From positions 62,001 through 126,000 of IMG/VR virus record IMGVR_UViG_3300036715_000626: a DNA stretch of 64,000 nucleotides; one strand, written 5' to 3'. Positions 1,630 to 59,752 of this stretch are shown here, piece by piece. How positions within the stretch are numbered: position 1 is the first letter of the stretch; each line of letters opens with the position of its first letter. The notes beneath the pieces were generated by a model, which was not told the origin of the DNA, made no database searches, and was given only the letters and a program-made list of their open reading frames with translations. The position numbers and the translations under genes are program-made.

Positions 1630-3484
1630 TCTCTTATTCACATAATACGTTACTATTACGTCGCGGCTTTACCCGCTGCTCGATCTTTCGACCGATGACT
1701 GTGTTTTACACAGAAAACCCTCTTAAGGGTGAGTAGACTATATCTTATTTTTGATTGTTTTGTGTTCAAGTCTTCTGATCTTAATATGGGGGTGATCAGA
1801 AAGACTCACTAATTCTTCTAAACTGTGTCTAAGTAAGTACGAGTTTATGTTTGATCTTGGATTACCAGCATCTTTAAATACTCCTAAATACATAGCTAAT
1901 CTGAAGTTACCAAATACATAAAATACTTGTTTACCTTCTTCTCTATTACTATCAATGACTTCATATGTAGCAGCACTAATATCTACATTGTATCTACTGT
2001 TTACTACCTCTTCTTCAGTATAGTTTTTCCAAGTAAAGTCATTAACAGATGATTTTATACCATAGCCTTTAATTATCCAAGACTCATTGCATGTAGACGA
2101 TTTAGCTAATGCCGTACTAATCCTGTGATTATTTACTTGGTTGGATACCGGCTCTTTTGTTAACAAGAAATCAGATACTTCATCAATAGTGTTTAACACT
2201 ATTTCTTCTTTAAGTGTATAATCATACAGATAGTAAAAATGATCTCTCTTGATATATGGTTTAGACAACCATGTTTCTCTTGCTAATATAACTTCTTCTT
2301 TATTAACACTGTTGGGTATTTTAGTAACATCCATAGTTGGAGTAACTAGATAACCCATGGTGTATATATAACCATCTCGATTAAGAAACTTAGATAAATA
2401 TCCAATGGACATACCTGTATTATAAGATACCAACATCATACTGTTATACATAGTCCATGTCTCATCAAGTACATCATATACCCACATCTCCACAGCAGCT
2501 TTACCACTGGTATTAACAGGTCCTAAAACAAACTTATCCTTTAGAGATATAATATACCTATTTAGAATAGGATACTTATCAGAATGTTTTATATGCGATA
2601 CGATAGCTAATGGATTGACATTCAAATATTTAGACATTCTACTAATAGACATAAAAGTTTTTTCAGTATTATCCAGTATATCTTTAACAGTGACTATTGC
2701 ACTGTTCGTCCATAACCCGCTATCAACTGCGTGATTGGTATTCTCTTTACGAGTATTCCAAGCCAAATTCCAAATCCTATTATTTTGTTTATTTCCATCT
2801 TCATGATTAACAGTTGGTTTATTTTCTGGATTAGGTATCCATGCTAAAGCAACCATTCTGTGTACTTTTCTAGGGTTCCTAGCTAAGGTATCAGATGTTA
2901 ATGTGGCGTTAACATAACCATCCGGATCTAGGCTTGTTTTTAAAAGCCCTCCAGTAATAACCCGCAGTCTACCTATATTACTAGCTTCGTAACCTTTATA
3001 CCCGAGCACTGGTTTCCAGAGTTCATTTTTTAATTCCTCCTCTGTATAAGGAATGTGTTTACTTCGTATTACCACTATATTCCTTTTTTAACAAACAACA
3101 CCCCCGTATTATTTGTTCCTTTTATAAAACAATCAAAATCCTTCCGTTTCGATTTAAGGGATTTGATACCCACCCACTTGGGCCCTACTCTACTCCGTTG
3201 AGTACTTATTAGTACCGAGAGCGTCTATAGCTCTCTCATACACTGTCGTGCGTCGTTTCGATAGTCGTTGAGCACATCTCTTCATCTTACATGCTAAGAG
3301 ACTTCGCTGCGTCGATTCCCAAATCCTGATGAGTTTTTACCATTCCTTTATTTCCATTATTACGGTTAAGGTTGTTATACTCTGTTTCCAGGTATAAGTG
3401 GTATCATCAAGCTCTAACGGGGTCCCCGCAATTAGGAAGGTTATTTTACTACGCATCACTGCGTAGGGAGACAAATTATTCTTT
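1630..3484 (-). mobile_element. group I intron (phage IA2-like) in nvRNAP beta', with homing endonuclease in P8
   Basis: P1: exon GGAGAU pairs IGS GUCUCC with the conserved U.G; P element AAUUGCGGGGA; Q AAUCGACGCAGC; R CUCAACGACUAUC; S AAGAUAUAGUCU; several P9 hairpins before exon 2. Confidence 0.9.
1738..3075 (-). CDS. intron-encoded NUMOD4-HNH homing endonuclease
   Basis: WKPVLGYKGYEASNIGRLR (NUMOD4); VHRMVALAW...VNHEDGNKQNNRIWNLAWNT (HNH_3); its TAG stop lies inside the intron S element. Confidence 0.9.
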   Translation of the reverse strand: MVIRSKHIPYTEEELKNELWKPVLGYKGYEASNIGRLRVITGGLLKTSLDPDGYVNATLTSDTLARNPRKVHRMVALAWIPNPENKPTVNHEDGNKQNNRIWNLAWNTRKENTNHAVDSGLWTNSAIVTVKDILDNTEKTFMSISRMSKYLNVNPLAIVSHIKHSDKYPILNRYIISLKDKFVLGPVNTSGKAAVEMWVYDVLDETWTMYNSMMLVSYNTGMSIGYLSKFLNRDGYIYTMGYLVTPTMDVTKIPNSVNKEEVILARETWLSKPYIKRDHFYYLYDYTLKEEIVLNTIDEVSDFLLTKEPVSNQVNNHRISTALAKSSTCNESWIIKGYGIKSSVNDFTWKNYTEEEVVNSRYNVDISAATYEVIDSNREEGKQVFYVFGNFRLAMYLGVFKDAGNPRSNINSYLLRHSLEELVSLSDHPHIKIRRLEHKTIKNKI

Positions 3485-4732
3485 ATCTCCATCAAAGTCA
3501 GCATTGGACGACTTAGCGATGAGACCCGAGATACCAATAGTGTTATCATAGGTATCTGTTTTAAACTTACCTATATACACTGCTTGTGATGAACCTTGTA
3601 GTAGACTTGGATTCCGTTGTGCTAAGACCATAATCTTTCTGTCAGGCGCTTCGTTAATGAGTTCCTGTAACAGTTCATCGATAAGCGGTATGTACCGTTT
3701 AACCGCGTCAAACAGCATGTTACTTGCTTTCTTATACGTCATTTTACGTTGATTAACCAACTTGTTTATAAGATGAGGTCTAAACGCAGTTACTCCGATA
3801 GCCCAAGGTACCCATATCTCGTCATGACGATGTTTACCAGGGATACTTGTAATAACTGATCTGAAAGTAAAATGTGATCTTGCTCCGTATACATGCTTAC
3901 GAAATAATCCTACTTTCTTAGTAATATACCGTTCATAGTAGTTATGATACAATGAAGCTAATTTAGAAATAACTACCGATGTATGAGATGCATTTTTACG
4001 ATGGCTTTGTTTCTCACTTGTAGAGTTAATCTTAATCCACGTCATAACAACATCAATAACATCCGATACCGCTAAGTTAATAAATTTACCTTTAGTGGTA
4101 TTTTCCATAACGAAGAGTTTCTTATTGATAATCGGTAAATAGTTACTGAAGATGAGATCCTTTTGATGGGTATACATGTCCAATAACAAATACAAGTTAT
4201 CTTGTTTATCGATATCTTTAAACTTAGCATGGTTCATCAGATACTGAATGATTTCAGGGAGTTTGATAATAAAGTTCTTATAAGAACGTTCTACCATAAT
4301 CTCTTTGATACCATGAGTAAAGTTTTGGAGTTCCACCGGTGGGTTATACATTGGATCAGTCATCCATCGTACATAATCGATTTTCTTATCGAGAATGTTA
4401 CGTAGCATCAACCAGTAAGCTGGGTTGATAAATTCTAACCCATCTTCTAATTTTTCTAACCAAAGCATAGGATCTACTTTTTCATGCACTTCTTTACAGA
4501 CAGTACCGCATGAACTACATACTTTTTCAAGTAGATAGCGACCTTTAAGGTTACCACAATCACAGGAAGGAATAGTAGATAGTATATCACTGTCATAAAC
4601 AGTAATCAGTTGGTTGTTAACTTCTTCGATGTCATCTACTGAGAAATGATCTAGGTTGTTAACGATTACTTTAAACCCTGTGGAGTGTGCGAAGAATTCG
4701 TCGAAATTGACTAAACGTTGTGTGATAGCCAT
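3485..4732 (-). CDS. non-virion RNAP beta' subunit, exon 1 (phiKZ gp55-like)
   Basis: Zn ribbon CDC...CSSC; RNPSL; catalytic NADFDGD immediately before the intron. Confidence 0.9.
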
Positions 4733-6563: not shown

Positions 6564-6940
6564 CAAATCCCGGAGTGCGCCCGAGATTTGGTTTAAAAAG
6601 GGGCAGCATATTTTTTATTATACTCTCCGTAAGACTTAACTATCGGAGAGTCCAGAGTTTCTTTTATCGCTAAGTATATCTCAACTACAGCGGTGAATAC
6701 ATCTGAATTGTTTTCTAATTGAAGCGTCCAACAATTAGAAACACTTAAACAGTTTAAATATCCGTGAGTTATCGAACGCGTAAGGCGTAAACCCGATACC
6801 GATACTACATCGCGATGAGGTAGCCTGACCAACCGCGAAATACCGGCAACGAATACTTAAATAAACTGTTTAAATGGGGTCTATCACGCGCCGTTTAACG
6901 CCGGCCAATAAGCCGGCTGATCGGCACGTATAGAACACCA
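6564..6940 (-). ncRNA. candidate large structured ncRNA
   Basis: GC-enriched; nested helices with many G.U pairs on the minus strand; no credible RBS-led ORF. Confidence 0.55.
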
Positions 6941-7049
6941 GTCAATGTTAATATAACACTCAATGGTATTCTTATGTTATCCACTCGACTAATACTTATT
7001 GTACCGTCAAGCTTTTCGAATATGATGCATTTCATTTCTAACTGATAAC

Positions 7050-7123
7050 TGGTTAGACTAGACAGATTCAAACTGTCGACCTCTGTAGGGTGATACAGTG
7101 CTCTATCGCTGAGCTATAGCCTT
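7050..7123 (-). tRNA. tRNA-like RNA with CCA end and a non-canonical 6-nt anticodon loop
   Basis: AAGGCTA/TAGTCTA acceptor, GCTC/GAGC D stem, CTGTA-TCACCC-TACAG, GACAG-TTTGAAT-CTGTC, ACCA end. Confidence 0.75.
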
Positions 7124-7223
7124 GTATGTTGTCATACAGGCTTGCAATTCCTACATTGTCAGATTTTTGTCTGTGGGCCTGTATAACTGGTGTCATTACT
7201 GACATAAAAAAGTTGCCTGTGCG

Positions 7224-7314
7224 TGGTGGGTGCGGTAGGATTCGAACCTACGACGTTTCTTTAAATGTGGTCGATTATGAGTCGACAGGGCTCGACCGCT
7301 GCCCGTACACACCC
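7224..7314 (-). tRNA. tRNA with CAT anticodon (elongator Met or Ile2), long variable region
   Basis: GGGTGTG/CGCACCC acceptor, GTCGA-CTCATAA-TCGAC, GTAGG-TTCGAAT-CCTAC, encoded ACCA. Confidence 0.85.
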
Positions 7315-7699
7315 AGTATAAATACTTCCTGTGATAATTTGCAACTTATTCACAGGTTGTACTGGTAGGATATGAGCTGCATGTACTACCATTCATGCAG
7401 ATGAGCTGGTCCAGTTGACCCGATATAAAAAGATAGTTTGCTCAACACGTATCTTAACTTAAGTACACTCGATTATTGTCACAGCTCTAAGCAGTAACTC
7501 ACACAGTGCGTACAAAACATCTTACTCAAGGATGCTTCGGGTGACGTATATGTTGTTGAATACCAAAATGCTAGCTGGCGTTACGCCTAGGCTTTTCGCT
7601 ACGGTAATACGGACTATAACGAGTCCGTAACAAAAACATACATTTATCGCCACCACTCAATGCTAATAAAGCACTCAATGGTAACCACAATCTAATATT

Positions 7700-7708
7700 A
7701 TAATATAG
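7700..7708 (-). promoter_or_regulatory. putative early promoter of the non-coding/tRNA operon
   Basis: CTATATTAT motif. Confidence 0.6.
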
Positions 7709-7896
7709 GGGTAAAATAAACTCGAACTTATACGCAACAATAACCTACGACGAAACACATTAGTTATTGTGCATATAAGAGTGTCAACCGTGTACGTATA
7801 ACACCTATCAGTATTAAAGTTAATATTCATAGGTAGTATATTATGGTCATAATAATCTATTCTGATAAAAAATTATTGCATCACCATTACTCATAT

Positions 7897-7917
7897 TGAG
7901 AGGGAACATCCCTCTCA
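7897..7917. terminator. terminator after chimallin
   Basis: TGAGAGGGA-ACA-TCCCTCTCA. Confidence 0.55.
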
Positions 7918-7923
7918 GATCGT

Positions 7924-9786
7924 TTAATAACGACCGAAACCCATATTAGAGTATCCGGTACCGAAGTTCGGCCCAGCGCTAATATTTTGACGAGCAAACC
8001 CAGAGGCATTTGTAATACCAGTGTTTTGATAGTGTTGTCCAACAAGACCGATATTGGTGTTTTCTGTAAACACGATTTCTGGTTCGTAACGAACATCAAG
8101 ACCGGCTGCTGTTGCTGCGTTTGCAAGAGTTGTGATAAAGTCAGCTGTGAATGTAACACGGATAGCTTTACCAGCGATTTCTGCATCAGGCATGATGCGA
8201 GATATGACATCTACACGATTGATAAATGGATCAGATCCACCATTCAAATCACGTGGAAGTGATGAGTAGACATATTTGTTCATAACCGCGGTATCACCAT
8301 TTTTAGCGCATACGAATGCCAAGTCGACATCACGGATATCGCGCTCACCAGATTTATCAGCCCAAACACCAGTAGGTACAACAACACCAGAAGTAGCGAA
8401 GATGTTACCGATTGGGAAATCTGATGGGAAGTTACCATCTGTCAACCAGTTAGCTGCTGCGATAAGCTCTTTAGCCGCTGCTGTTTTGTTTTCGTTGTTA
8501 CCCGGTTGGGCCGCCTGTGAGAATATCGAAAGATATGATGTTTGTGGTCCGAATGACGGAATATCCAAAGATACTACCGGCGCAAGACTGAACATTTGAC
8601 CAATGATCCCGTAGATTTCATCTGTGGTATTTTTCTTACTTGTAAGATCAAGTACCGCGCCGATACCATTAGGATTACCTTCAAGGTTGGTGATCATGTT
8701 CAATACACCTGGGGTACGATCGTTACGTGGAGTAAGAGCTGCCATCCACATATTCTTTTGAGTCATAACCATACCGGCGATCAAACCAAGAAGTGCGAAA
8801 CCTGTTGTAGGCATAGCCACCGCATCACTTGTAATCACAATATGTGGTTTAAGACGTAGTTGTGATACCATAGGCATACCTGGAACTTGCGTTTGAACAT
8901 TGTCAGGAATAGCATCGATATAACCAGAAACCGCAGCAAGTGTTTGACGACCAGTGTCAGCGTTCAACGAATGGAATTGTTGTTGTGTGTTAACACGTAA
9001 CAATTCGATACGCCAGTCTGTACGTACTGGGCGACCTGATTCATCACGAGATACAGGGTTACCCATATTTGACTCTATTTTAAGCATTGATTCACCAGAA
9101 CGACCGACCGCTTCACGGATATTCAAATCACGGGTTGTGCCGCTCGTAAGAGCTGCTTCTACGTTCAACGCGTTGAATGCAATTGGCGCGATACGACGCG
9201 CAAGCGTCGCAACATCTTCATGTGTAGCATGTACGACAAGACCGTCAACGGTGACAAATTCAGTATTTTCACCGTACTCTTTAGAAAGTGCAGATACGAT
9301 GATACGCATCAATTCAGAATCGATTGCGTCGTCAGTTGTGAAGATAAATGGACGAGTATTTGTTTTAATCGCTTGGTTAACTTCATTTGTGATTTCGATC
9401 GCTTTCATAGGACGGCGACCAGTGTCCTCGAGAAGTAACGTATAGTAGTTAACTACGCCGCCGTCCGATTTAGAAATCACGATAGTGCTGTACGCAATAC
9501 CAGTAAAAATTTCTTTGTCAATAACCGTCACACGAGGACGTTGTGCGGTTAGAATTGGTTTGAACGTTTCCAACAATGCGTTACCGATGTTCATAGTATA
9601 TTCTGAACCTTGGTTAGTGGACATTGTGTAAATGTCACGACCGCCAAAACCTATTCCCATAGGGGTTTGCATTTTAGCACCCATATTTGATTTAAGATCT
9701 GCAACTGCTGCGGCTGTTTGCGTAGCTCCTACTGAAGCACCTGCGTTTGGTTTTTGATTGTTGTTAGCATCTGAGTTTACACCCAT
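7924..9786 (-). CDS. chmA: phage nuclear shell protein chimallin (phiKZ gp54-like)
   Basis: 620 aa; flexible N- and C-terminal tails; G.PVR.D motif; lies upstream of nvRNAP beta' as in Chimalliviridae. Confidence 0.8.
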   Translation of the reverse strand: MGVNSDANNNQKPNAGASVGATQTAAAVADLKSNMGAKMQTPMGIGFGGRDIYTMSTNQGSEYTMNIGNALLETFKPILTAQRPRVTVIDKEIFTGIAYSTIVISKSDGGVVNYYTLLLEDTGRRPMKAIEITNEVNQAIKTNTRPFIFTTDDAIDSELMRIIVSALSKEYGENTEFVTVDGLVVHATHEDVATLARRIAPIAFNALNVEAALTSGTTRDLNIREAVGRSGESMLKIESNMGNPVSRDESGRPVRTDWRIELLRVNTQQQFHSLNADTGRQTLAAVSGYIDAIPDNVQTQVPGMPMVSQLRLKPHIVITSDAVAMPTTGFALLGLIAGMVMTQKNMWMAALTPRNDRTPGVLNMITNLEGNPNGIGAVLDLTSKKNTTDEIYGIIGQMFSLAPVVSLDIPSFGPQTSYLSIFSQAAQPGNNENKTAAAKELIAAANWLTDGNFPSDFPIGNIFATSGVVVPTGVWADKSGERDIRDVDLAFVCAKNGDTAVMNKYVYSSLPRDLNGGSDPFINRVDVISRIMPDAEIAGKAIRVTFTADFITTLANAATAAGLDVRYEPEIVFTENTNIGLVGQHYQNTGITNASGFARQNISAGPNFGTGYSNMGFGRY

Positions 9787-11104: not shown

Positions 11105-11109
11105 GAAAA

Positions 11110-11180
11110 AAATAGGCTGGATTCGAACCAGCGACCGATAGCCCTTGCGGGCTATAACTCTACCACTGAGCTACTATATA
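11110..11180 (-). ncRNA. anticodon-less tRNA-like small RNA
   Basis: TAGCTCAGTGGTAGAG D arm; ATAGCCC-GCAA-GGGCTAT in place of the anticodon arm; GCTGG-TTCGAAT-CCAGC T arm; weak acceptor, no CCA, ends in a T-run. Confidence 0.7.
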
Positions 11181-17083: not shown

Positions 17084-17092
17084 ATAATATAG
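17084..17092 (-). promoter_or_regulatory. putative early promoter
   Basis: CTATATTAT motif. Confidence 0.6.
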
Positions 17093-17132: not shown

Positions 17133-17381
17133 TTATACGTTACTATCAGGTAGTCTTTCCCATACTCCATTACGTAAGTAACCATGCCATCTTAACCCAT
17201 TCCATTCAGTAACTAATATACTAGGTTCAACACTTATACTTTTATTATCATGCTCAATTACCGTATGTGCTTCTAAATTACAAAACATAAACATTTCTTT
17301 ATTCTCAGTAGGTATCCTACCGTACCATATACCATCATGCTTAATAACTTGTCCCGGTCTTAATGTAAATAGATTTAGCAT
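17133..17381 (-). CDS. small protein, DUF6527-like
   Basis: H.V......ISV.PSIL.....WHG.L.NG.W pattern. Confidence 0.5.
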   Translation of the reverse strand: MLNLFTLRPGQVIKHDGIWYGRIPTENKEMFMFCNLEAHTVIEHDNKSISVEPSILVTEWNGLRWHGYLRNGVWERLPDSNV

Positions 17382-17510
17382 AGGTTAAATTCCTTTAATT
17401 TGTTATATAATAATAATTCACTTATAAATATTACTTTATTAATAAGATATATATGATACTAATAATTTAAACTTAATTAAACTTATATTATTTTATAATT
17501 ATTTATTATC

Positions 17511-17710
17511 CTAGGTAGTTGATGTATGTATGCACTATTATAACCTATACGACATGAGTCAGACTTATTCTGACGTTGGCAGGTAACACAGGCAGGCAAG
17601 CAAGATAACTTACACTAGATAACTAACTCGGCATACATATATTAATTACTTAGTAATAGATAACCTATCTCTTGTAGAGATAGGGGACGAGGGGCGTAAG
17701 CCCCGAGTCC
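17511..17710 (+). ncRNA. candidate structured ncRNA in the strand-switch region
   Basis: 23-bp helix 17511-17533/17631-17653 whose four non-WC pairs are all G.U; two following hairpins, one with a GTAA (GNRA) loop. Confidence 0.55.
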
Positions 17711-17865
17711 TTAAATAAATAAATAAATAATCACTAATATAGATATTTATTAATTTTATATAAAAGTTACATAAAGGATTAATCGTGATAATAACAGGAA
17801 TATTAGTATCTAAAAAATAAAAATACTAAATAAACAATTTAGTAGACACTAACAAAGGAAATACC

Positions 17866-18306
17866 ATGTTTAACATTATACGTTTATTTATCAATTCTTT
17901 AAAGATAACTTACCTAGATCTTATATTCTATTATAAGCTACAAAGTATTCTTAAACAATTGGTAAACATCAAGATACCTATCAGAACTGTTCATTACGAT
18001 AAGAGAACTAAAGCTATTGTACTAACACATGTTAATTATGGTTCTAATTGTGTAATACTTCATAGGATTAAAACGAATAACCTTTATGGTAAGTACCGAT
18101 ACAATCCTAATAAACCTCATAGTGAAACTATCCTTACCTTAAGAGAAGCTTATAGGTTGTTATTTTTATATTACTCAGAAGGAGCTCCTATTCTAAAAGG
18201 ATTAGATTTTGCTTCTTTACGAGTTATTGAATTACGTATTGAAAAGATCGTCAAAGCAAATAACCAAATGAGGTTTACAGACACATCAAGATTTCATAAA
18301 GGTTAA
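17866..18306 (+). CDS. hypothetical protein
   Basis: 146 aa, AAAGGA RBS. Confidence 0.65.
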   Translation: MFNIIRLFINSLKITYLDLIFYYKLQSILKQLVNIKIPIRTVHYDKRTKAIVLTHVNYGSNCVILHRIKTNNLYGKYRYNPNKPHSETILTLREAYRLLFLYYSEGAPILKGLDFASLRVIELRIEKIVKANNQMRFTDTSRFHKG

Positions 18307-21919: not shown

Positions 21920-24900
21920 ATGGGCTTGTTTAACAACGCATCTCCAGATGTCATTATGCTGGGAGCTAATGACCTAAGCATTAGACAGATTCCGGTATCG
22001 GATCAACCGATTCCACAACACTTACCACTTTTTTATATGTTCTCTGAAAAAGGTCCAACAAAACGTAACTTGGTAGGTGGTTCGGGTCTTACCAATCTCT
22101 ATGGTTCAAAAACTTTTGATATCAATGGTAAATACTTTAACCACCAAACACGTTTCCTACAATCTATCGCTGGTACAGGTAATACTTGTATGGTAAACCG
22201 TCTTGTACCACTTGACGCGGGTGATGAAGCTAATGCTATTATCTACGCATGTGTTCTTGATACCGCTAACAAAAATATCATTGCTCGTAACAGTGATGGG
22301 AGTTATAAAATTGATCCTAGTACCGGTAGTTATGTTATTGATGGTACTGATTCTGTTTATAGTATCACCTTTATGAAAGAGTATACTGGAGATCTTCCTA
22401 AAACTTCGCCGGTTCCAGCTGTTAGCAGTTATGCTAATGGTTTGCATTACCAAAATAACGCTGTGATGTCTTCAGGTACAACAACTGCTGGTGGCTGGTC
22501 TAAATATGGTGAGCTTCCGTTAGATACTGTCTACGCTGGGGCGTATGGTTCCGGTCAATTGAGTAAACATCAAGTTGTTGAAACTAATAGTCGTGTTTAT
22601 ATCATTGGCGGTTTTGAGCAAACTCTTAACGCGCCTAGTGATGCAATCTATTCAGCTTTGAAATACGCTGACGGTAGTATCGGAGAATTCACACTTGAAA
22701 ACTTCAAACTACCACGCGGGGTAGCAGGACATAAATGTCTTATTACAAATGGTTATTTATATGTTATCGGCGGATTATCTTCAGATACAACTTTGAACAA
22801 TGTTTATAATTATGCTATCGATGTTGATGGTACTATTATTCCTGGTACGTATACAGCGCAAGCAAATCTTCCGATACCGGCTAACGGAAGTCAAGTATTT
22901 GTTGTTGGAAGTAAGATCTATTGTGTTGGTGGTGCCGGTAATACAACAATCGCGTATGCGAGTATCGGTAGTAATGGTATCATCAGTAGTTGGTTTACCT
23001 ACACTGGAGCTGGTTACACTATCGATGGTACAAATACTTTAAAAGATGCTGGTGTGTTTGTTACCGCTAAACGCGATAACGCTACAGACGGTATTGCTTA
23101 CAAAGTGTATTTGATTGGTGGTATTAAAACTACTAATGCCGGAGTAGAGAGTCTGTCTTCTACAGTATACCAGTTGATCTTTAACGAAAATGGACAACCG
23201 CTTACATCATTGAGCGGCCAAACATTTATCAAAGCTAATACAGGTGTTTTACCAGCTACTATGGCTGCGTTCCAAATGTATGCTACTAAAGATAAGATTC
23301 ATATCTTTGGAGGGTTAACCGATGGAAATGTTGCTAATATTGAAAAAGTAAGTACTGTTGCGTATACACTTGAACTCGATGCCAATCAAGATTTCATTAT
23401 TGACTCAGTAAGCGGTACTTTGTTTAAAGCTAAAGCCGACTACGATAGTACTTATGTAGGATCCGCATATGGTCAATTGTTTGTAACAACAACCCGTATT
23501 TATGTAGTGGGTGGGTACGCAGGTACTAATTTACCTGTCAACGGTTACGCCGGTGCGTTAGTACCAACGCATGTTTACTACAACGCGGTATTCTCTACTT
23601 TGATCAATGATGGATGGTTAATTAAAACTAACTACGCGTCAGCAGTACCAATGGCTCCTAAGGTTGATATTGGTGCGGTATGCGCTAAACCTATTAAAAT
23701 GGGTAGTTCTACAGGTATAGCTTATCCTATTTTTGAATTCCGTGCTAAAGAAAAAGGTGCATATTACAATAACTTGGCATTTAGTATCTCTCCTATTCGC
23801 GGATCTGACGTTGACACCAAAGCATTACTTGCTAATAAAGCATTAGAGTATACTCTTGCATTGTACTCACGCCCGGATGTAAACAGCTCACCGTCGGTTA
23901 TTCGTAGTTTATACGGTGAAACATCGCTACCATTTACATTTAAAGAAAAAGCTATTCACCCGGTAACAGGTATTCGCTACGATCTTGAAAATGTATTTGG
24001 AAATAACTGGTACAACGAAACCGATAACTTGCTTCCGTACAAACCGTATGAGTTTGACAACATTCATGTTTACCATGATAACATTGACAAACTTTTAACT
24101 ATGTTCATGAAGCGTGAAGCTAGTTATATCGACAGTACTACTATGACATGGTACGATTTTACAACTGATAATGCTACATTGTTGGTACAAGACGAGCGTT
24201 ATCTTTTAGATATGTTTACTTGTAATTCAACATCAGGTATTCCTTACAGTACTCTTGAGTACTTTAAAGATGGTTTAGCGGAACTTACTCCGTATCAATC
24301 AGAAATCATGTTGACTTCAAATACACCGGTATTCTTATCAGGTGGATCTGATGGTAGTCTTACTAATGAGATGTTCGAACTTCTTGTTAAACAAGATCTT
24401 TTGAAATATAACGATACTGAATCAGACGTACAAGATATGGCTATAAACGTTGAGTCTATTCTTTGGGATTCAGGCTTTACAGTTCCTACAAAAATGGAAT
24501 TGGCAAACTTCATTTCATTGCGTAAAGATACTGTTCTTGCGTTGTCAACGCATGATGCATCAATGGGTAACAAAAACTATACTCTGTCACAAGAGCGCGC
24601 TATTGCAGTAGCTTTGAGATCACGTCTTAACCTTACTCCTGAATCTGAGTATTATGGAACGGGTGTAGCTCGTGCTATCATTGTTGCTGGTACTGGTAAC
24701 TTACGTGACGGATCTACCGATGAGCGTATTCCGTTGATCTACGATATCGCTATGAAATCAGCTACCATGATGGGTGCCGGTAATGGTAATTGGAAACAAG
24801 AGTTTTTGTTCGATAAAGCTCCTGGTAATATCGTTACTACTCTTACCAATATCAAACCTGACTTCATTCCGGCTGGTGTTAAACCTACGTTGTGGGCTGA

Positions 24901-25303
24901 TGGAATCGTATGGGCACAACCATTCGATAGAACACAATTCCATTTCCCTGCTATTCAAACAGTGTACTCCGATGATACATCAGTATTGAATTCATTCTTT
25001 ACAGTTATGGTATTGGCGACCTTGAATAAAATTGGTGCTGATGCATGGCGTAACTTTACTGGTTCAACTGCTCTTACTAACGGACAGTTTATCGATGCAG
25101 TTACTGCATATGTAAACAAAAAACTAGTAGATCGTTTTGCTGGTATGGTTACTGTTGTTCCTGAAGTTGTTATTACCGAAGAAGATGCCATCAGAGGCTA
25201 TAGCTGGCGGTTAGTTAACAAACTCTATGCTTCTAATATGAAAACCAAAATGGTATATAGTACAGAAGTATATAGAGCATCTGATCTCACTACGGGAGCT
25301 TAA
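21920..25303 (+). CDS. tail sheath protein (phiKZ gp29-like) with inserted Kelch domain
   Basis: PQHLPLFY..SEKGP; YPIFE..A...G; GGSDG; WDSGF; PES.YYGT..RA; much longer than gp29. Confidence 0.85.
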   Translation: MGLFNNASPDVIMLGANDLSIRQIPVSDQPIPQHLPLFYMFSEKGPTKRNLVGGSGLTNLYGSKTFDINGKYFNHQTRFLQSIAGTGNTCMVNRLVPLDAGDEANAIIYACVLDTANKNIIARNSDGSYKIDPSTGSYVIDGTDSVYSITFMKEYTGDLPKTSPVPAVSSYANGLHYQNNAVMSSGTTTAGGWSKYGELPLDTVYAGAYGSGQLSKHQVVETNSRVYIIGGFEQTLNAPSDAIYSALKYADGSIGEFTLENFKLPRGVAGHKCLITNGYLYVIGGLSSDTTLNNVYNYAIDVDGTIIPGTYTAQANLPIPANGSQVFVVGSKIYCVGGAGNTTIAYASIGSNGIISSWFTYTGAGYTIDGTNTLKDAGVFVTAKRDNATDGIAYKVYLIGGIKTTNAGVESLSSTVYQLIFNENGQPLTSLSGQTFIKANTGVLPATMAAFQMYATKDKIHIFGGLTDGNVANIEKVSTVAYTLELDANQDFIIDSVSGTLFKAKADYDSTYVGSAYGQLFVTTTRIYVVGGYAGTNLPVNGYAGALVPTHVYYNAVFSTLINDGWLIKTNYASAVPMAPKVDIGAVCAKPIKMGSSTGIAYPIFEFRAKEKGAYYNNLAFSISPIRGSDVDTKALLANKALEYTLALYSRPDVNSSPSVIRSLYGETSLPFTFKEKAIHPVTGIRYDLENVFGNNWYNETDNLLPYKPYEFDNIHVYHDNIDKLLTMFMKREASYIDSTTMTWYDFTTDNATLLVQDERYLLDMFTCNSTSGIPYSTLEYFKDGLAELTPYQSEIMLTSNTPVFLSGGSDGSLTNEMFELLVKQDLLKYNDTESDVQDMAINVESILWDSGFTVPTKMELANFISLRKDTVLALSTHDASMGNKNYTLSQERAIAVALRSRLNLTPESEYYGTGVARAIIVAGTGNLRDGSTDERIPLIYDIAMKSATMMGAGNGNWKQEFLFDKAPGNIVTTLTNIKPDFIPAGVKPTLWADGIVWAQPFDRTQFHFPAIQTVYSDDTSVLNSFFTVMVLATLNKIGADAWRNFTGSTALTNGQFIDAVTAYVNKKLVDRFAGMVTVVPEVVITEEDAIRGYSWRLVNKLYASNMKTKMVYSTEVYRASDLTTGA

Positions 25304-59131: not shown

Positions 59132-59174
59132 GTTAACTCCTGTTGTTCATTATATGGATGTCGATATAAAAATT

Positions 59175-59206
59175 ATATACACTGTAGCACACGCTACAGT
59201 GTATAT
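59175..59206. terminator. terminator
   Basis: 14-bp arms overlapping the RuvC stop. Confidence 0.65.
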
Positions 59207-59751
59207 AGGATATAAGGAAACTCTCGTATCTCCATTAGTACAGTATAACCAATAGCTATAGCATCTACTTCATGTTCTGATAATATGTATGGGTTAATAT
59301 GGTTAGTAAGTTCGTCTATTGCGGACATAGTTACCATCATATCATCCTTATCAGCACTGCCACCAGCTCCCAAAATACGCTTGATATAACGGGGCATATA
59401 TCTAAACATTTTGATACGGGTATTGAGAGTATACATAGTATGTTCTATAACAGCTACATACTGAGATAGTTGTAATACGGCTTTAGGAAAACGAGTATTG
59501 AGAAAGGACGTTTCTACGCCAAGAGCAATAGGATTATACGCAACATATAGATCAGTTACTATATCCTGTATCACACTTAACTTATAAAGTAACTTATTAA
59601 AATTATCGTCCAATACCGGTATGAGATTTTCGAGCACATAAAGCCTCGTCTCAATATTAACTATGGAAAAATCTCTAACATCTACAGTGATAATAGAAAC
59701 ACCTATGTTATTACCAGGGTCTATCGTCAGTATGTTTATTAAGTTATCCAT
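59194..59751 (-). CDS. ruvC: RuvC-like Holliday junction resolvase
   Basis: TIDPG; VE; G.A.KDDM; HE.DAIAIG; start set at MDNL. Confidence 0.85.
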   Translation of the reverse strand: MDNLINILTIDPGNNIGVSIITVDVRDFSIVNIETRLYVLENLIPVLDDNFNKLLYKLSVIQDIVTDLYVAYNPIALGVETSFLNTRFPKAVLQLSQYVAVIEHTMYTLNTRIKMFRYMPRYIKRILGAGGSADKDDMMVTMSAIDELTNHINPYILSEHEVDAIAIGYTVLMEIREFPYILYTL

Positions 59752-59752
59752 T

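What the first reader, a model, noticed from the sequence alone, without database searches (positions are those of the whole stretch)
17511..17710. Hidden + strand structured RNA in the 480-bp AT-rich strand-switch region
Seen: CUAGGUAGUUGAUGUAUGUAUGC (17511-17533) pairs along its full 23 nt with GCAUACAUAUAUUAAUUACUUAG (17631-17653). All four non-WC positions are G.U, which works only as + strand RNA. It encloses a 97-nt interior with hairpin GUCAGA/UCUGAC and the repeat CAGGCAGGCAAGCAAG. It is followed by CCUAUCUC/GAGAUAGG and GGAC-GA-GGGGC-GUAA-GCCCC-GA-GUCC (GNRA loop). A TATATTAT lies at 17484 on the same strand. Inference: a new sRNA (6S-like RNAP decoy, replication primer RNA or leader switch).
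Basis: partly seen in the sequence, partly recalled or inferred. Interest (0 to 1): 0.7.

Follow-up and report, generated by a model that had tools for sequence, protein, structure and literature searches.

The report
New structured RNA in jumbo phage
The long AT-rich gap between two diverging genes of an uncultivated nucleus-forming jumbo phage holds a previously undescribed folded RNA of about 145 nt, read from the + strand and kept in four related phage lineages; its job is still unknown.

Summary
17511-17533 pairs with 17631-17653 over 23 bp with four G.U pairs, enclosing 97 nt, and two hairpins follow (17664-17684, 17685-17710).

It is not chance. The + strand folds far better than shuffles (z -7.2). 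The same element sits upstream of the homologous 146-aa gene in three more diverged phage lineages (L006, L008/L009, L018), where that protein appears at 73%, 56% and a distant profile-level match.

Across the four lineages:
- 97% of cells pair.
- Five pairs show compensatory double changes (shuffles give 1.2).
- Only the + strand folds well (z -3.3 to -5.7, against -0.6 to -1.6 for the - strand).
- The inner bulged hairpin arm (17544-17583) is almost invariant.

The host genome is a chimallivirus-like jumbo phage with its own RNA polymerases, from a microbial mat. Nothing matches in Rfam or in phiKZ, 201phi2-1 and FLC4-3B. The element is single-copy, with no origin-type skew signal.

Best reading: a discrete small RNA (or a piece processed from a 5' leader). 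Its long end-to-end stem is a stabilising or RNase III stalk that presents an invariant arm, probably for a protein. The 6S-like, primer and leader-switch functions are not shown. No RNA data could be obtained.

The parts
17448..17464 (.). Box A, TATATATGATACTAATA. It is invariant in three lineages, and its core TATATGATA is also kept in L018. It lies 44-56 nt upstream of the stem. It is a candidate promoter, either for the RNA (it contains TATG, the phiKZ late-promoter core) or, read on the - strand, for the leftward gene.
   Evidence: Alignment A1; L018 sequence; TATG core cited from PMC7598289; the - strand reading scores 8.3 bits on the promoter matrix. Its role was not determined.
17484..17491 (+). 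It matches the genome's intergenic promoter-like motif, but weakly outside the 8-mer, and it is not conserved in relatives.
   Evidence: TATATTAT: 29 of 67 copies are intergenic, against 7.3% of the genome being intergenic; 20 lie within 200 nt upstream of a same-strand gene. This site scores 11.0 bits, rank 39 of 410,000 positions, against a training median of about 25. Absent in L006, L008 and L018.
17511..17533 (+). P1, 5' arm of the 23-bp closing stem.
   Evidence: Four P1 pairs show double compensatory changes, and several show A-U/G.U exchanges.
17534..17543 (+). 5' joining strand. Its length and sequence vary among lineages.
   Evidence: Alignment A4.
17544..17583 (+). Nearly invariant bulged hairpin arm. 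In order: P2 (CCU/AGG), internal loop AUA/GC, P3 (CGAC/GUUG), 4-nt bulge AUGA, P4 (GUCAGA/UCUGAC) and loop CYUAU.
   Evidence: P4 and P2 are invariant in all four lineages. P3 has one compensatory C-G to U-A change (L006) and one G.U to A-U change (L018).
17584..17630 (+). Variable, A/C-rich 3' joining strand with no conserved helix. Only short motifs recur (ACUAGAUAA in three lineages, CUAAY in four).
   Evidence: Alignment A4; single-sequence folds disagree here.
17631..17653 (+). P1, 3' arm. It contains CATATATTA, nine bases of the phage's promoter-like core. This is a weak observation.
   Evidence: Promoter-matrix scores are 0.4 to 7.9 bits in the four lineages.
17664..17684 (+). Hairpin H5 (9-bp stem). 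It is present in the window type and in L008/L009, and replaced by other hairpins in L006 and L018.
17685..17710 (+). Hairpin H6. It is GC-rich, with a tandem G.A internal loop and a GNRA tetraloop, and no U-tract follows. It is probably a 3' end or stabiliser hairpin of the window/L008 type only.
   Evidence: A strain variant changes the loop from GUAA to GCAA, still GNRA. L007 holds its 3' half.
17718..17737 (+). Box B (AAATAAATAATCACTAATA region). It is conserved and lies in front of the 121-aa nuclease-like gene in L008, so it is probably that gene's promoter or 5' region.
17785..17820 (+). Eleven-codon remnant (GTG...TAA) of the N-terminus of the 121-aa PD-(D/E)XK/HSDR_N-like gene that is intact in L008 and L009.
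   Evidence: Read (VIITGILVSKK against MHTTGIKVSKK); Pfam hit on the L008 protein; strain substitutions cluster here.
17866..18306 (+). 146-aa ORF of unknown function. The RNA is found upstream of this gene family in all four lineages.
   Evidence: The AF2 model (pLDDT 85.7) has no significant fold match.

Best explanation
The gap encodes a conserved structured RNA, read left to right on the + strand.

Architecture: a core of about 143 nt (17511-17653) is closed by a 23-31 bp helix, P1, formed by its two ends. Inside are a variable 5' joiner, an almost sequence-invariant 40-nt bulged hairpin arm (P2-P3-P4) and a variable 45-nt 3' joiner.

Proposed mechanism, which is inferred and not shown: the RNA is made as its own short transcript, or is cut out of a longer rightward transcript. 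P1 acts as a rigid double-stranded stalk that fixes and protects the ends. Its length also makes it a plausible substrate for host RNase III. The invariant arm is the working part, recognised by a phage or host protein, so the RNA would act in trans as a small RNP or protein sponge during infection.

Shown here: the structure, its strand, its conservation and covariation, that it is single-copy, and its fixed position upstream of the 146-aa gene family.

Inferred: that it is transcribed, where its ends lie, any RNase III processing, and any protein partner.
For: - Fold: z -7.2 on the + strand. The core gives z -5.3, -5.2, -3.3 and -5.7 on + against -1.1, -1.2, -1.6 and -0.6 on - in the four lineages.
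- Homologous elements lie upstream of homologues of the 146-aa protein, at 73% and 56% identity and one distant profile match.
- On alignment A4, 97.3% of cells pair. Five pairs have double compensatory changes against 1.2 +/- 0.9 in shuffles (0 of 500 as high) and 0-1 in slid controls.
- P1 varies while keeping its pairing: A-U to G.U to G-C, G-C to A-U, U-A to C-G, C-G to U-A. P2 and P4 never vary. This pattern fits a helix that only has to be a helix, plus an arm read by sequence.
- In L018, P1 is 31 bp and is followed directly by U8, then by a second hairpin and a TTGATAA promoter-like box before the gene. In L006 a strong hairpin with a U-rich tail separates the RNA from the gene. In L008 a whole gene lies between them. 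All three favour a separate unit.
- H6 has a GNRA loop and tandem G.A pairs on the + strand only, and a strain variant keeps the loop GNRA.
- The covariance model finds one copy in the genome, at 178 bits on + against 30 on -.
- Chimalliviruses are known to make intergenic and UTR-derived small RNAs of unknown function (PMC11512511; PMC8545117).
Against: - No transcript evidence exists: no RNA run was listed, and the only holders found are DNA metagenomes.
- No conserved promoter is assignable. TATATTAT is not conserved, and box A is ambiguous in direction.
- In the window and in L008 no U-tract follows P1, H5 or H6, so read-through into the downstream genes is possible.
- There are only four independent lineages.
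- No protein partner was identified. The adjacent 146-aa protein has no recognisable fold, and the phage encodes no Ro/TROVE, RNase III or reverse transcriptase.
- L015-L017 carry a distant homologue of the gene in the same synteny but lack the RNA.
Confidence: 0.55

Rival explanations
1. It is a cis-acting 5' leader or attenuator of the rightward operon (the 121-aa nuclease-like gene and/or the 146-aa gene). The invariant arm would bind a regulator, possibly the operon's own product or a small ligand, and so control termination or mRNA stability downstream.
For: - The element always lies on the same strand upstream of the 146-aa gene family in the four lineages.
- In L018, P1 plus U8 looks like an intrinsic terminator.
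- In the window and L008 no U-tract separates it from the downstream gene.
- Eight of the eleven 201phi2-1 sRNAs arise by premature termination in 5' UTRs (PMC11512511).
Against: - P1 is so long and stable (23-31 bp) that no competing fold is evident, and none was predicted.
- The distance to the regulated start codon is 200 nt or more.
- Extra terminator-like hairpins, a promoter-like box, or a whole gene lie in between.
- No known riboswitch or leader family matches.
Confidence: 0.2
2. It is purely an RNase III processing site, like the T7 R sites or the stems that flank rRNA precursors. On this view P1 exists only to be cut, separating or stabilising neighbouring transcripts, and the interior has no function of its own.
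For: P1 is a near-perfect duplex of 23-31 bp in every lineage. That meets the roughly two-helical-turn length typical of RNase III substrates (general knowledge). After such a cut, H5 and H6 would sit at the 5' end of the downstream RNA.
Against: The interior arm is more strictly conserved than P1 itself, with P2 and P4 invariant, which a mere spacer would not be. The phage has no RNase III gene of its own. Cleavage was not tested.
Confidence: 0.1
3. It is a 6S-like decoy that titrates an RNA polymerase, either the host holoenzyme or one of the phage's own enzymes.
For: The topology is loosely similar: a closing stem, a large asymmetric open region and an inner hairpin. The phage carries its own multisubunit RNAP genes. 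The P1 3' arm contains nine bases of the phage's promoter-like core in all lineages.
Against: - No 6S model matches, even at E up to 10.
- The sequence-invariant arm with variable joiners is the opposite of the usual 6S pattern (my own knowledge).
- The promoter-core match is weak, at 0.4-7.9 bits. A TATATTA heptamer is expected by chance in about 5% of 143-nt stretches of this genome, estimated from the counts.
Confidence: 0.05
4. It works at the DNA level rather than as RNA: an origin or cruciform, a protein-binding inverted repeat, or the relic of a small inverted-repeat mobile element.
For: It lies in the longest divergent intergenic gap of the genome, the gap is AT-rich, and it holds an inverted repeat.
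Against: - All non-Watson-Crick positions are G.U on the + strand in every lineage. The - strand and the DNA cruciform would therefore carry 4-6 mismatches, and the - strand z-scores are not significant.
- Substitutions pass through G.U intermediates.
- The element is single-copy.
- The cumulative GC skew has no extremum here; the global maximum is at genome position 55,049.
Confidence: 0.04
5. The conserved arm encodes a micro-peptide. An AUG at 17555 opens MSQTYSD(V/I/G)GR, 10 codons in the window and 17-19 in the relatives.
For: Reading by eye, the first ten codons are kept in all four lineages, and three of the five substitutions are synonymous.
Against: - There is no Shine-Dalgarno sequence, whereas this phage's genes have strong AAGGA-type sites.
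- The AUG sits in the bulge between P3 and P4.
- The C-terminal tails differ in length and sequence.
- The compensatory C to U change lies outside the ORF and is explained only by RNA pairing.
Confidence: 0.04

Closest known systems
Small RNAs of chimalliviruses: phiKZ intergenic and UTR-derived ncRNAs, and 201phi2-1 sRNA001-011 including the conserved sRNA005
   Same: Same kind of virus, with a nuclear-shell protein and two multisubunit RNAPs. Same kind of object: a short, structured, non-coding RNA in an intergenic or 5' UTR position, conserved among related jumbo phages, with unknown function (PMC11512511; PMC8545117).
   Different: There is no homology. The covariance model finds nothing in phiKZ, 201phi2-1 or FLC4-3B. 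The genomic position differs, and so does the architecture: here a long end-to-end stem around a large interior. The described sRNAs were found by transcriptomics; this one rests on covariation only.
6S RNA
   Same: A long closing helix formed by the two ends, an open asymmetric middle and an inner hairpin, with a size of about 150-200 nt.
   Different: No Rfam 6S match. The inner arm is sequence-invariant and the joiners are variable. RNAP binding is untested.
Y RNA / bacterial YrlA
   Same: The 5' and 3' ends pair into a long stem that carries a functional module, and such RNAs are known in some phages (my own knowledge).
   Different: No Rfam match, no tRNA-like module, and no Ro/TROVE gene in the phage.
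RNase III processing stems (T7 R sites, stems flanking rRNA precursors)
   Same: A near-perfect duplex of two or more helical turns, formed by sequences that flank an RNA segment.
   Different: The enclosed segment here is short and has its own invariant hairpin. Cleavage is untested, and the phage has no RNase III gene.

Membership tests
Any Rfam 15 family (including 6S, Y RNA, riboswitches, leaders, introns) | Score at or near the family's gathering threshold | tested here: not met
   The gathering scan of the window finds only two tRNAs. The permissive scan of 17300-17950 gives only BSnc120 at 18.6 bits against a gathering score of 114, E 0.25.
6S RNA | Closing stem, central bubble and internal stem; conserved as a shape rather than a sequence | tested here: inconclusive
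   The topology is loosely similar. The conservation pattern is reversed, with an invariant arm and variable joiners.
6S RNA | Binds RNAP holoenzyme and templates product RNA | not testable with these tools
   Needs biochemistry.
Y RNA / YrlA | Partner Ro60/Rsr (TROVE) protein encoded nearby or in the genome | tested here: not met
   PF05731 finds nothing in the 205-kb genome, while the controls ring.
Retron msr/msd | Adjacent reverse transcriptase | tested here: not met
   PF00078 finds nothing in the genome.
Intrinsic terminator | Stable hairpin followed directly by a U-tract | tested here: inconclusive
   Met in L018, where P1 is followed by U8. Not met in the window, where UAAUAG follows P1 and UUAAAUAAAU follows H6. 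The scan calls only a - strand site at H5.
RNase III substrate | Roughly 20 bp or more of near-continuous dsRNA | tested here: met
   23 bp in the window and L006; 21 of 23 in L008; 31 bp with one bulge in L018. Actual cleavage was not tested.
Miniature inverted-repeat element / IS relic | Multiple copies with terminal inverted repeats | tested here: not met
   Single copy by blastn-short and by the covariance model.
Replication origin / terminus | Extremum of cumulative GC skew | tested here: not met
   The global maximum is at genome position 55,049 and the minimum at the end. The local sign change follows gene strand, as at the other 44 block borders.
Chimallivirus sRNAs already described (phiKZ, 201phi2-1) | Homologue detectable in those genomes | tested here: not met
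   Model R1 gives no hit in NC_004629, NC_010821 or LC819007, and only E of about 0.05 noise in MW749006.
This phage's TATATTAT promoter-like class | Extended match (upstream AACC, downstream TAG) that is conserved in relatives | tested here: not met
   The 17484 site scores 11 bits against a median of about 25. No such site lies upstream of the element in L006, L008 or L018.

The most novel reading that the evidence does not exclude
The RNA is a polymerase decoy of a nucleus-forming phage. It would be a 6S-like molecule whose conserved stem carries an RNA copy of the phage's own promoter core (CAUAUAUUA). It would titrate the host holoenzyme or the injected virion RNAP and so time the early-to-late switch.
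Probability: 0.05. Interest if true: 0.85.

Novelty: new member of a known kind. Interest (0 to 1): 0.55.

Why it matters
Nucleus-forming jumbo phages transcribe with their own polymerases, and transcriptomics has shown that they make small RNAs whose functions are unknown. This element is a family of that kind defined by covariation rather than by expression. It has a clear two-part design: a freely covarying 23-31 bp stalk and a sequence-invariant bulged hairpin. That design gives a concrete bait for pull-downs and a compact target for mutagenesis.

The analysis also yields a covariance model for finding more members in metagenomes. As by-products it yields a promoter-like motif (TATATTAT) for this uncultivated phage clade and a probable group I intron.

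The limits are real: the family is rare, with four lineages; the host is unknown; and there is no expression evidence yet.

Tried and rejected
- DNA similarity of the gap to GenBank phages found nothing.
- Exact-pattern scans of viral, metagenome and genome contig collections, using the last hairpin and two core patterns, gave no true relatives. The one metagenome hit, L014, is GC-rich. It matches only 36 nt of the model and no Rfam family, so I treat it as chance.
- The search for related loci with the 146-aa, 617-aa and tail-sheath proteins in viral contigs found nothing.
- Homologue searches with the DUF6527 protein and with P0010 added no new lineage.
- RNA runs: none was listed. The DNA runs gave only a strain about 98% identical, with three substitutions in the element.
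- Target search: there is no extended complementarity or paralogue in the genome, and no enrichment of arm-related words near start codons.
- ACTAATA, which is shared by boxes A and B, is not a genome-wide motif. A T-run plus TTGAT(A/T) promoter-like class exists but is only mildly enriched, so assigning box A to it stays uncertain.
- The 146-aa neighbour: the Atlas lookup gave no usable hit by sequence features and no interpretable structural neighbour (its own model there is poor, pLDDT 0.43). The AF2 model is good (pLDDT 85.7), but no PDB or viral fold match reaches E 0.001 or better, so it gives no clue to an RNA-binding role.
- K-turn, box C/D, tetraloop-receptor and anticodon-loop readings of the arm were checked by eye and do not fit.
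It was repeated with a coarser step, where the element's 200-nt window ranks ninth on the + strand. The windows above it lie in the 30-nt tandem repeat and at two other structured regions, one of them a terminator pair.

Full report
**1. What the window is**

The window is bases 62,001-126,000 of a 205,015-bp IMG/VR virus record with terminal repeats.
- It encodes a phiKZ-type tail sheath (21920-25303), a nuclear-shell (chimallin) protein (7924-9786, - strand) and several multisubunit RNAP beta-like subunits. This makes it a chimallivirus-like, nucleus-forming jumbo phage.
- It is only about 35% identical in the sheath protein to any GenBank phage.
- DNA runs that hold the sequence are microbial-mat and sediment metagenomes.

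**2.

- Reading the sequence, 17511-17533 pairs with 17631-17653 over 23 consecutive pairs, four of them G.U. The enclosed interior is 97 nt.
- Two hairpins follow, at 17664-17684 and 17685-17710. The second has a GUAA loop and a symmetric GA/GA internal loop.
- The gap between the leftward DUF6527 gene (start at 17381) and the rightward 146-aa ORF (17866) is 484 nt. It is the longest divergent gap among the genome's 45 strand blocks.
- Folding 17505-17715 gives -75.8 kcal/mol on the + strand (z -7.24), against z -4.57 for the - strand.
- In a genome-wide scan of 200-nt windows, this window ranks ninth on the + strand. The windows above it lie in a coding tandem repeat and at two other structured regions, one of them a terminator pair.

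**3. Relatives**

Direct DNA and pattern searches found nothing.

Homologues of the adjacent 146-aa protein led to contigs that carry the same element upstream on the same strand:
- L006, where the protein is 73% identical.
- L008 and L009, 56% identical.
- L007, where only the tail of the last hairpin is present.
- Three near-identical strains, L011-L013.

An exhaustive profile search added two distant homologues:
- L018-L022 carry a diverged copy of the element.
- The syntenic L015-L017 do not carry it.

A covariance model built from the alignment gave these scores:

| Sequence | Score, + strand |
|---|---|
| Window type (own genome; strain L013) | 178 bits |
| L006 | 167 bits |
| L008 | 148 bits |
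| L018 | 121 bits |

- The - strand scores 22-30 bits.
- The model finds a single copy in the phage genome.
- It finds nothing in phiKZ, 201phi2-1 or Ralstonia phage FLC4-3B.

**4. Structure and covariation**

The RNAalifold consensus and my explicit structure on alignment A4 agree on four helices:
- P1, 23 bp.
- P2, CCU/AGG.
- P3, CGAC/GUUG.
- P4, GUCAGA/UCUGAC, with a 4-nt AUGA bulge before it and a CYUAU loop.

Pairing statistics:
- 97.3% of cells pair.
- Five pairs carry double compensatory changes, four in P1 and one in P3, against 1.2 +/- 0.9 in shuffles (0 of 500 as high) and 0-1 when the partners are slid.
- Several more P1 pairs switch between A-U and G.U.
- P2 and P4 never vary.

In L018, P1 is lengthened to 31 bp with one bulged C.

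The strand test is clean in all four lineages:

| Lineage | z, + strand | z, - strand |
|---|---|---|
| Window | -5.3 | -1.1 |
| L006 | -5.2 | -1.2 |
| L008 | -3.3 | -1.6 |
| L018 | -5.7 | -0.6 |

A strain about 98% identical has only three changes in the element: one in an unpaired junction, one outside P1, and one that turns GUAA into GCAA, which is still GNRA.

Limits of this evidence:
- There are only four independent lineages, so the covariation is supportive rather than overwhelming.
- The shuffle control does not correct for relatedness.

**5. Boundaries and signals**

Promoter-like motifs:
- TATATTAT is a genuine intergenic motif of this phage. Of 67 copies, 29 are intergenic, and 20 lie within 200 nt upstream of a same-strand gene. 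One sits 8 nt before a tRNA.
- This fits the AT-rich box centred near -10 that is described for jumbo-phage early promoters (PMC7598289).
- The copy at 17484 matches the extended motif only weakly, and it is missing in the relatives.

Conserved boxes:
- Box A (17448-17464) lies 44-56 nt upstream of P1. It contains TATG, the phiKZ late-promoter core. Read on the - strand it also resembles the TATATTAT class. Its direction is therefore undecided.
- Box B (17718-17737) precedes a 121-aa PD-(D/E)XK-like gene in L008. Only an 11-codon remnant of that gene survives in the window, at 17785-17820.

What follows P1 differs by lineage:
- Window and L008: H5 and H6, with no U-tract.
- L006: other hairpins.
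- L018: U8 directly after P1, then another hairpin and a TTGATAA box before the gene.

This favours a separate transcription unit, or an RNA that is cut out, over a classical leader switch. Without RNA data the ends are unknown: no RNA run was listed.

**6. What it is not**

- No Rfam family matches.
- The phage has no Ro/TROVE, RNase III or reverse-transcriptase gene.
- There are no extra copies and no complementary targets in the genome.
- There is no skew extremum at the site.
- A ten-codon ORF, MSQTYSD(V/I/G)GR, is conserved inside the arm. It lacks a ribosome-binding site, starts in a bulge and has unrelated tails. One compensatory change lies outside it.
- The neighbouring 146-aa protein folds confidently (pLDDT 85.7), but its fold matches nothing significantly.

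**7. Verdict**

- Its most likely mode of action is as a small trans-acting RNP-type RNA. A covarying end-to-end stalk, possibly an RNase III site, presents an invariant hairpin arm.
- A cis-acting leader is the main rival. The 6S-like and primer ideas are not supported.
- It belongs to a known kind, the small RNAs of chimalliviruses, but it is not homologous to the described ones.

Noticed in passing
window 3177-3494 (-), with ORF 1738-3075 (-) and gene 3476-4732 (-): A probable group I intron: Intron_gpI at 32 bits, E 2.7e-5, below the gathering score of 50. It lies next to an HNH endonuclease ORF and abuts an RNAP beta-subunit gene (phrog_2987). It looks like an intron with a homing endonuclease in a phage RNAP gene.
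   Followed up: partly
window 7053-7123 (-), 7224-7314 (-), 11108-11180 (-): Three tRNA genes. The one at 7053-7123 appears only in the permissive Rfam scan. ARAGORN calls the one at 11108 with an odd anticodon. A TATATTAT box lies 8 nt upstream of that tRNA's 5' end.
   Followed up: partly
whole genome; for example window 17084-17091 (-), 15185 (-), 26804 (-), 4817 (-): The phage has a promoter-like motif, consensus about AACCATATATTATTWATGTAGA. It lies 26-110 nt upstream of many genes in the gene's own orientation and is probably the early (virion RNAP) promoter class. A second, looser class is a T-run plus TTGAT(A/T)A, 17-32 nt before start codons.
   Followed up: partly
window 17785-17820 (+): An eleven-codon remnant of a 121-aa PD-(D/E)XK/HSDR_N-like gene that is intact in L008:3183-3548 and in L009. 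Strain substitutions cluster in it.
   Followed up: partly
L002:2351-3005 (genome 54,350-55,004, outside the window): About 22 tandem copies of a 30-nt unit with internal dyad symmetry. These are the most stably folding windows of the genome. They lie inside a - strand coding block and right beside the global maximum of cumulative GC skew (55,049). The weak Rfam hits there (isrG, miRNA models) are repeat artefacts.
   Followed up: partly
window 6833-7923 and 59132-59752: Two other long non-coding stretches, 1091 and 621 nt. The first holds the tRNAs and lies upstream of the chimallin gene. Neither was examined further.
   Followed up: no
L015:5836-5865: In the syntenic relatives that lack the RNA, the same gap holds only a short hairpin (CUAGG...CCUAG) directly after a TTTTTTGATAC box. 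The box resembles box A and the TTGAT class.
   Followed up: no
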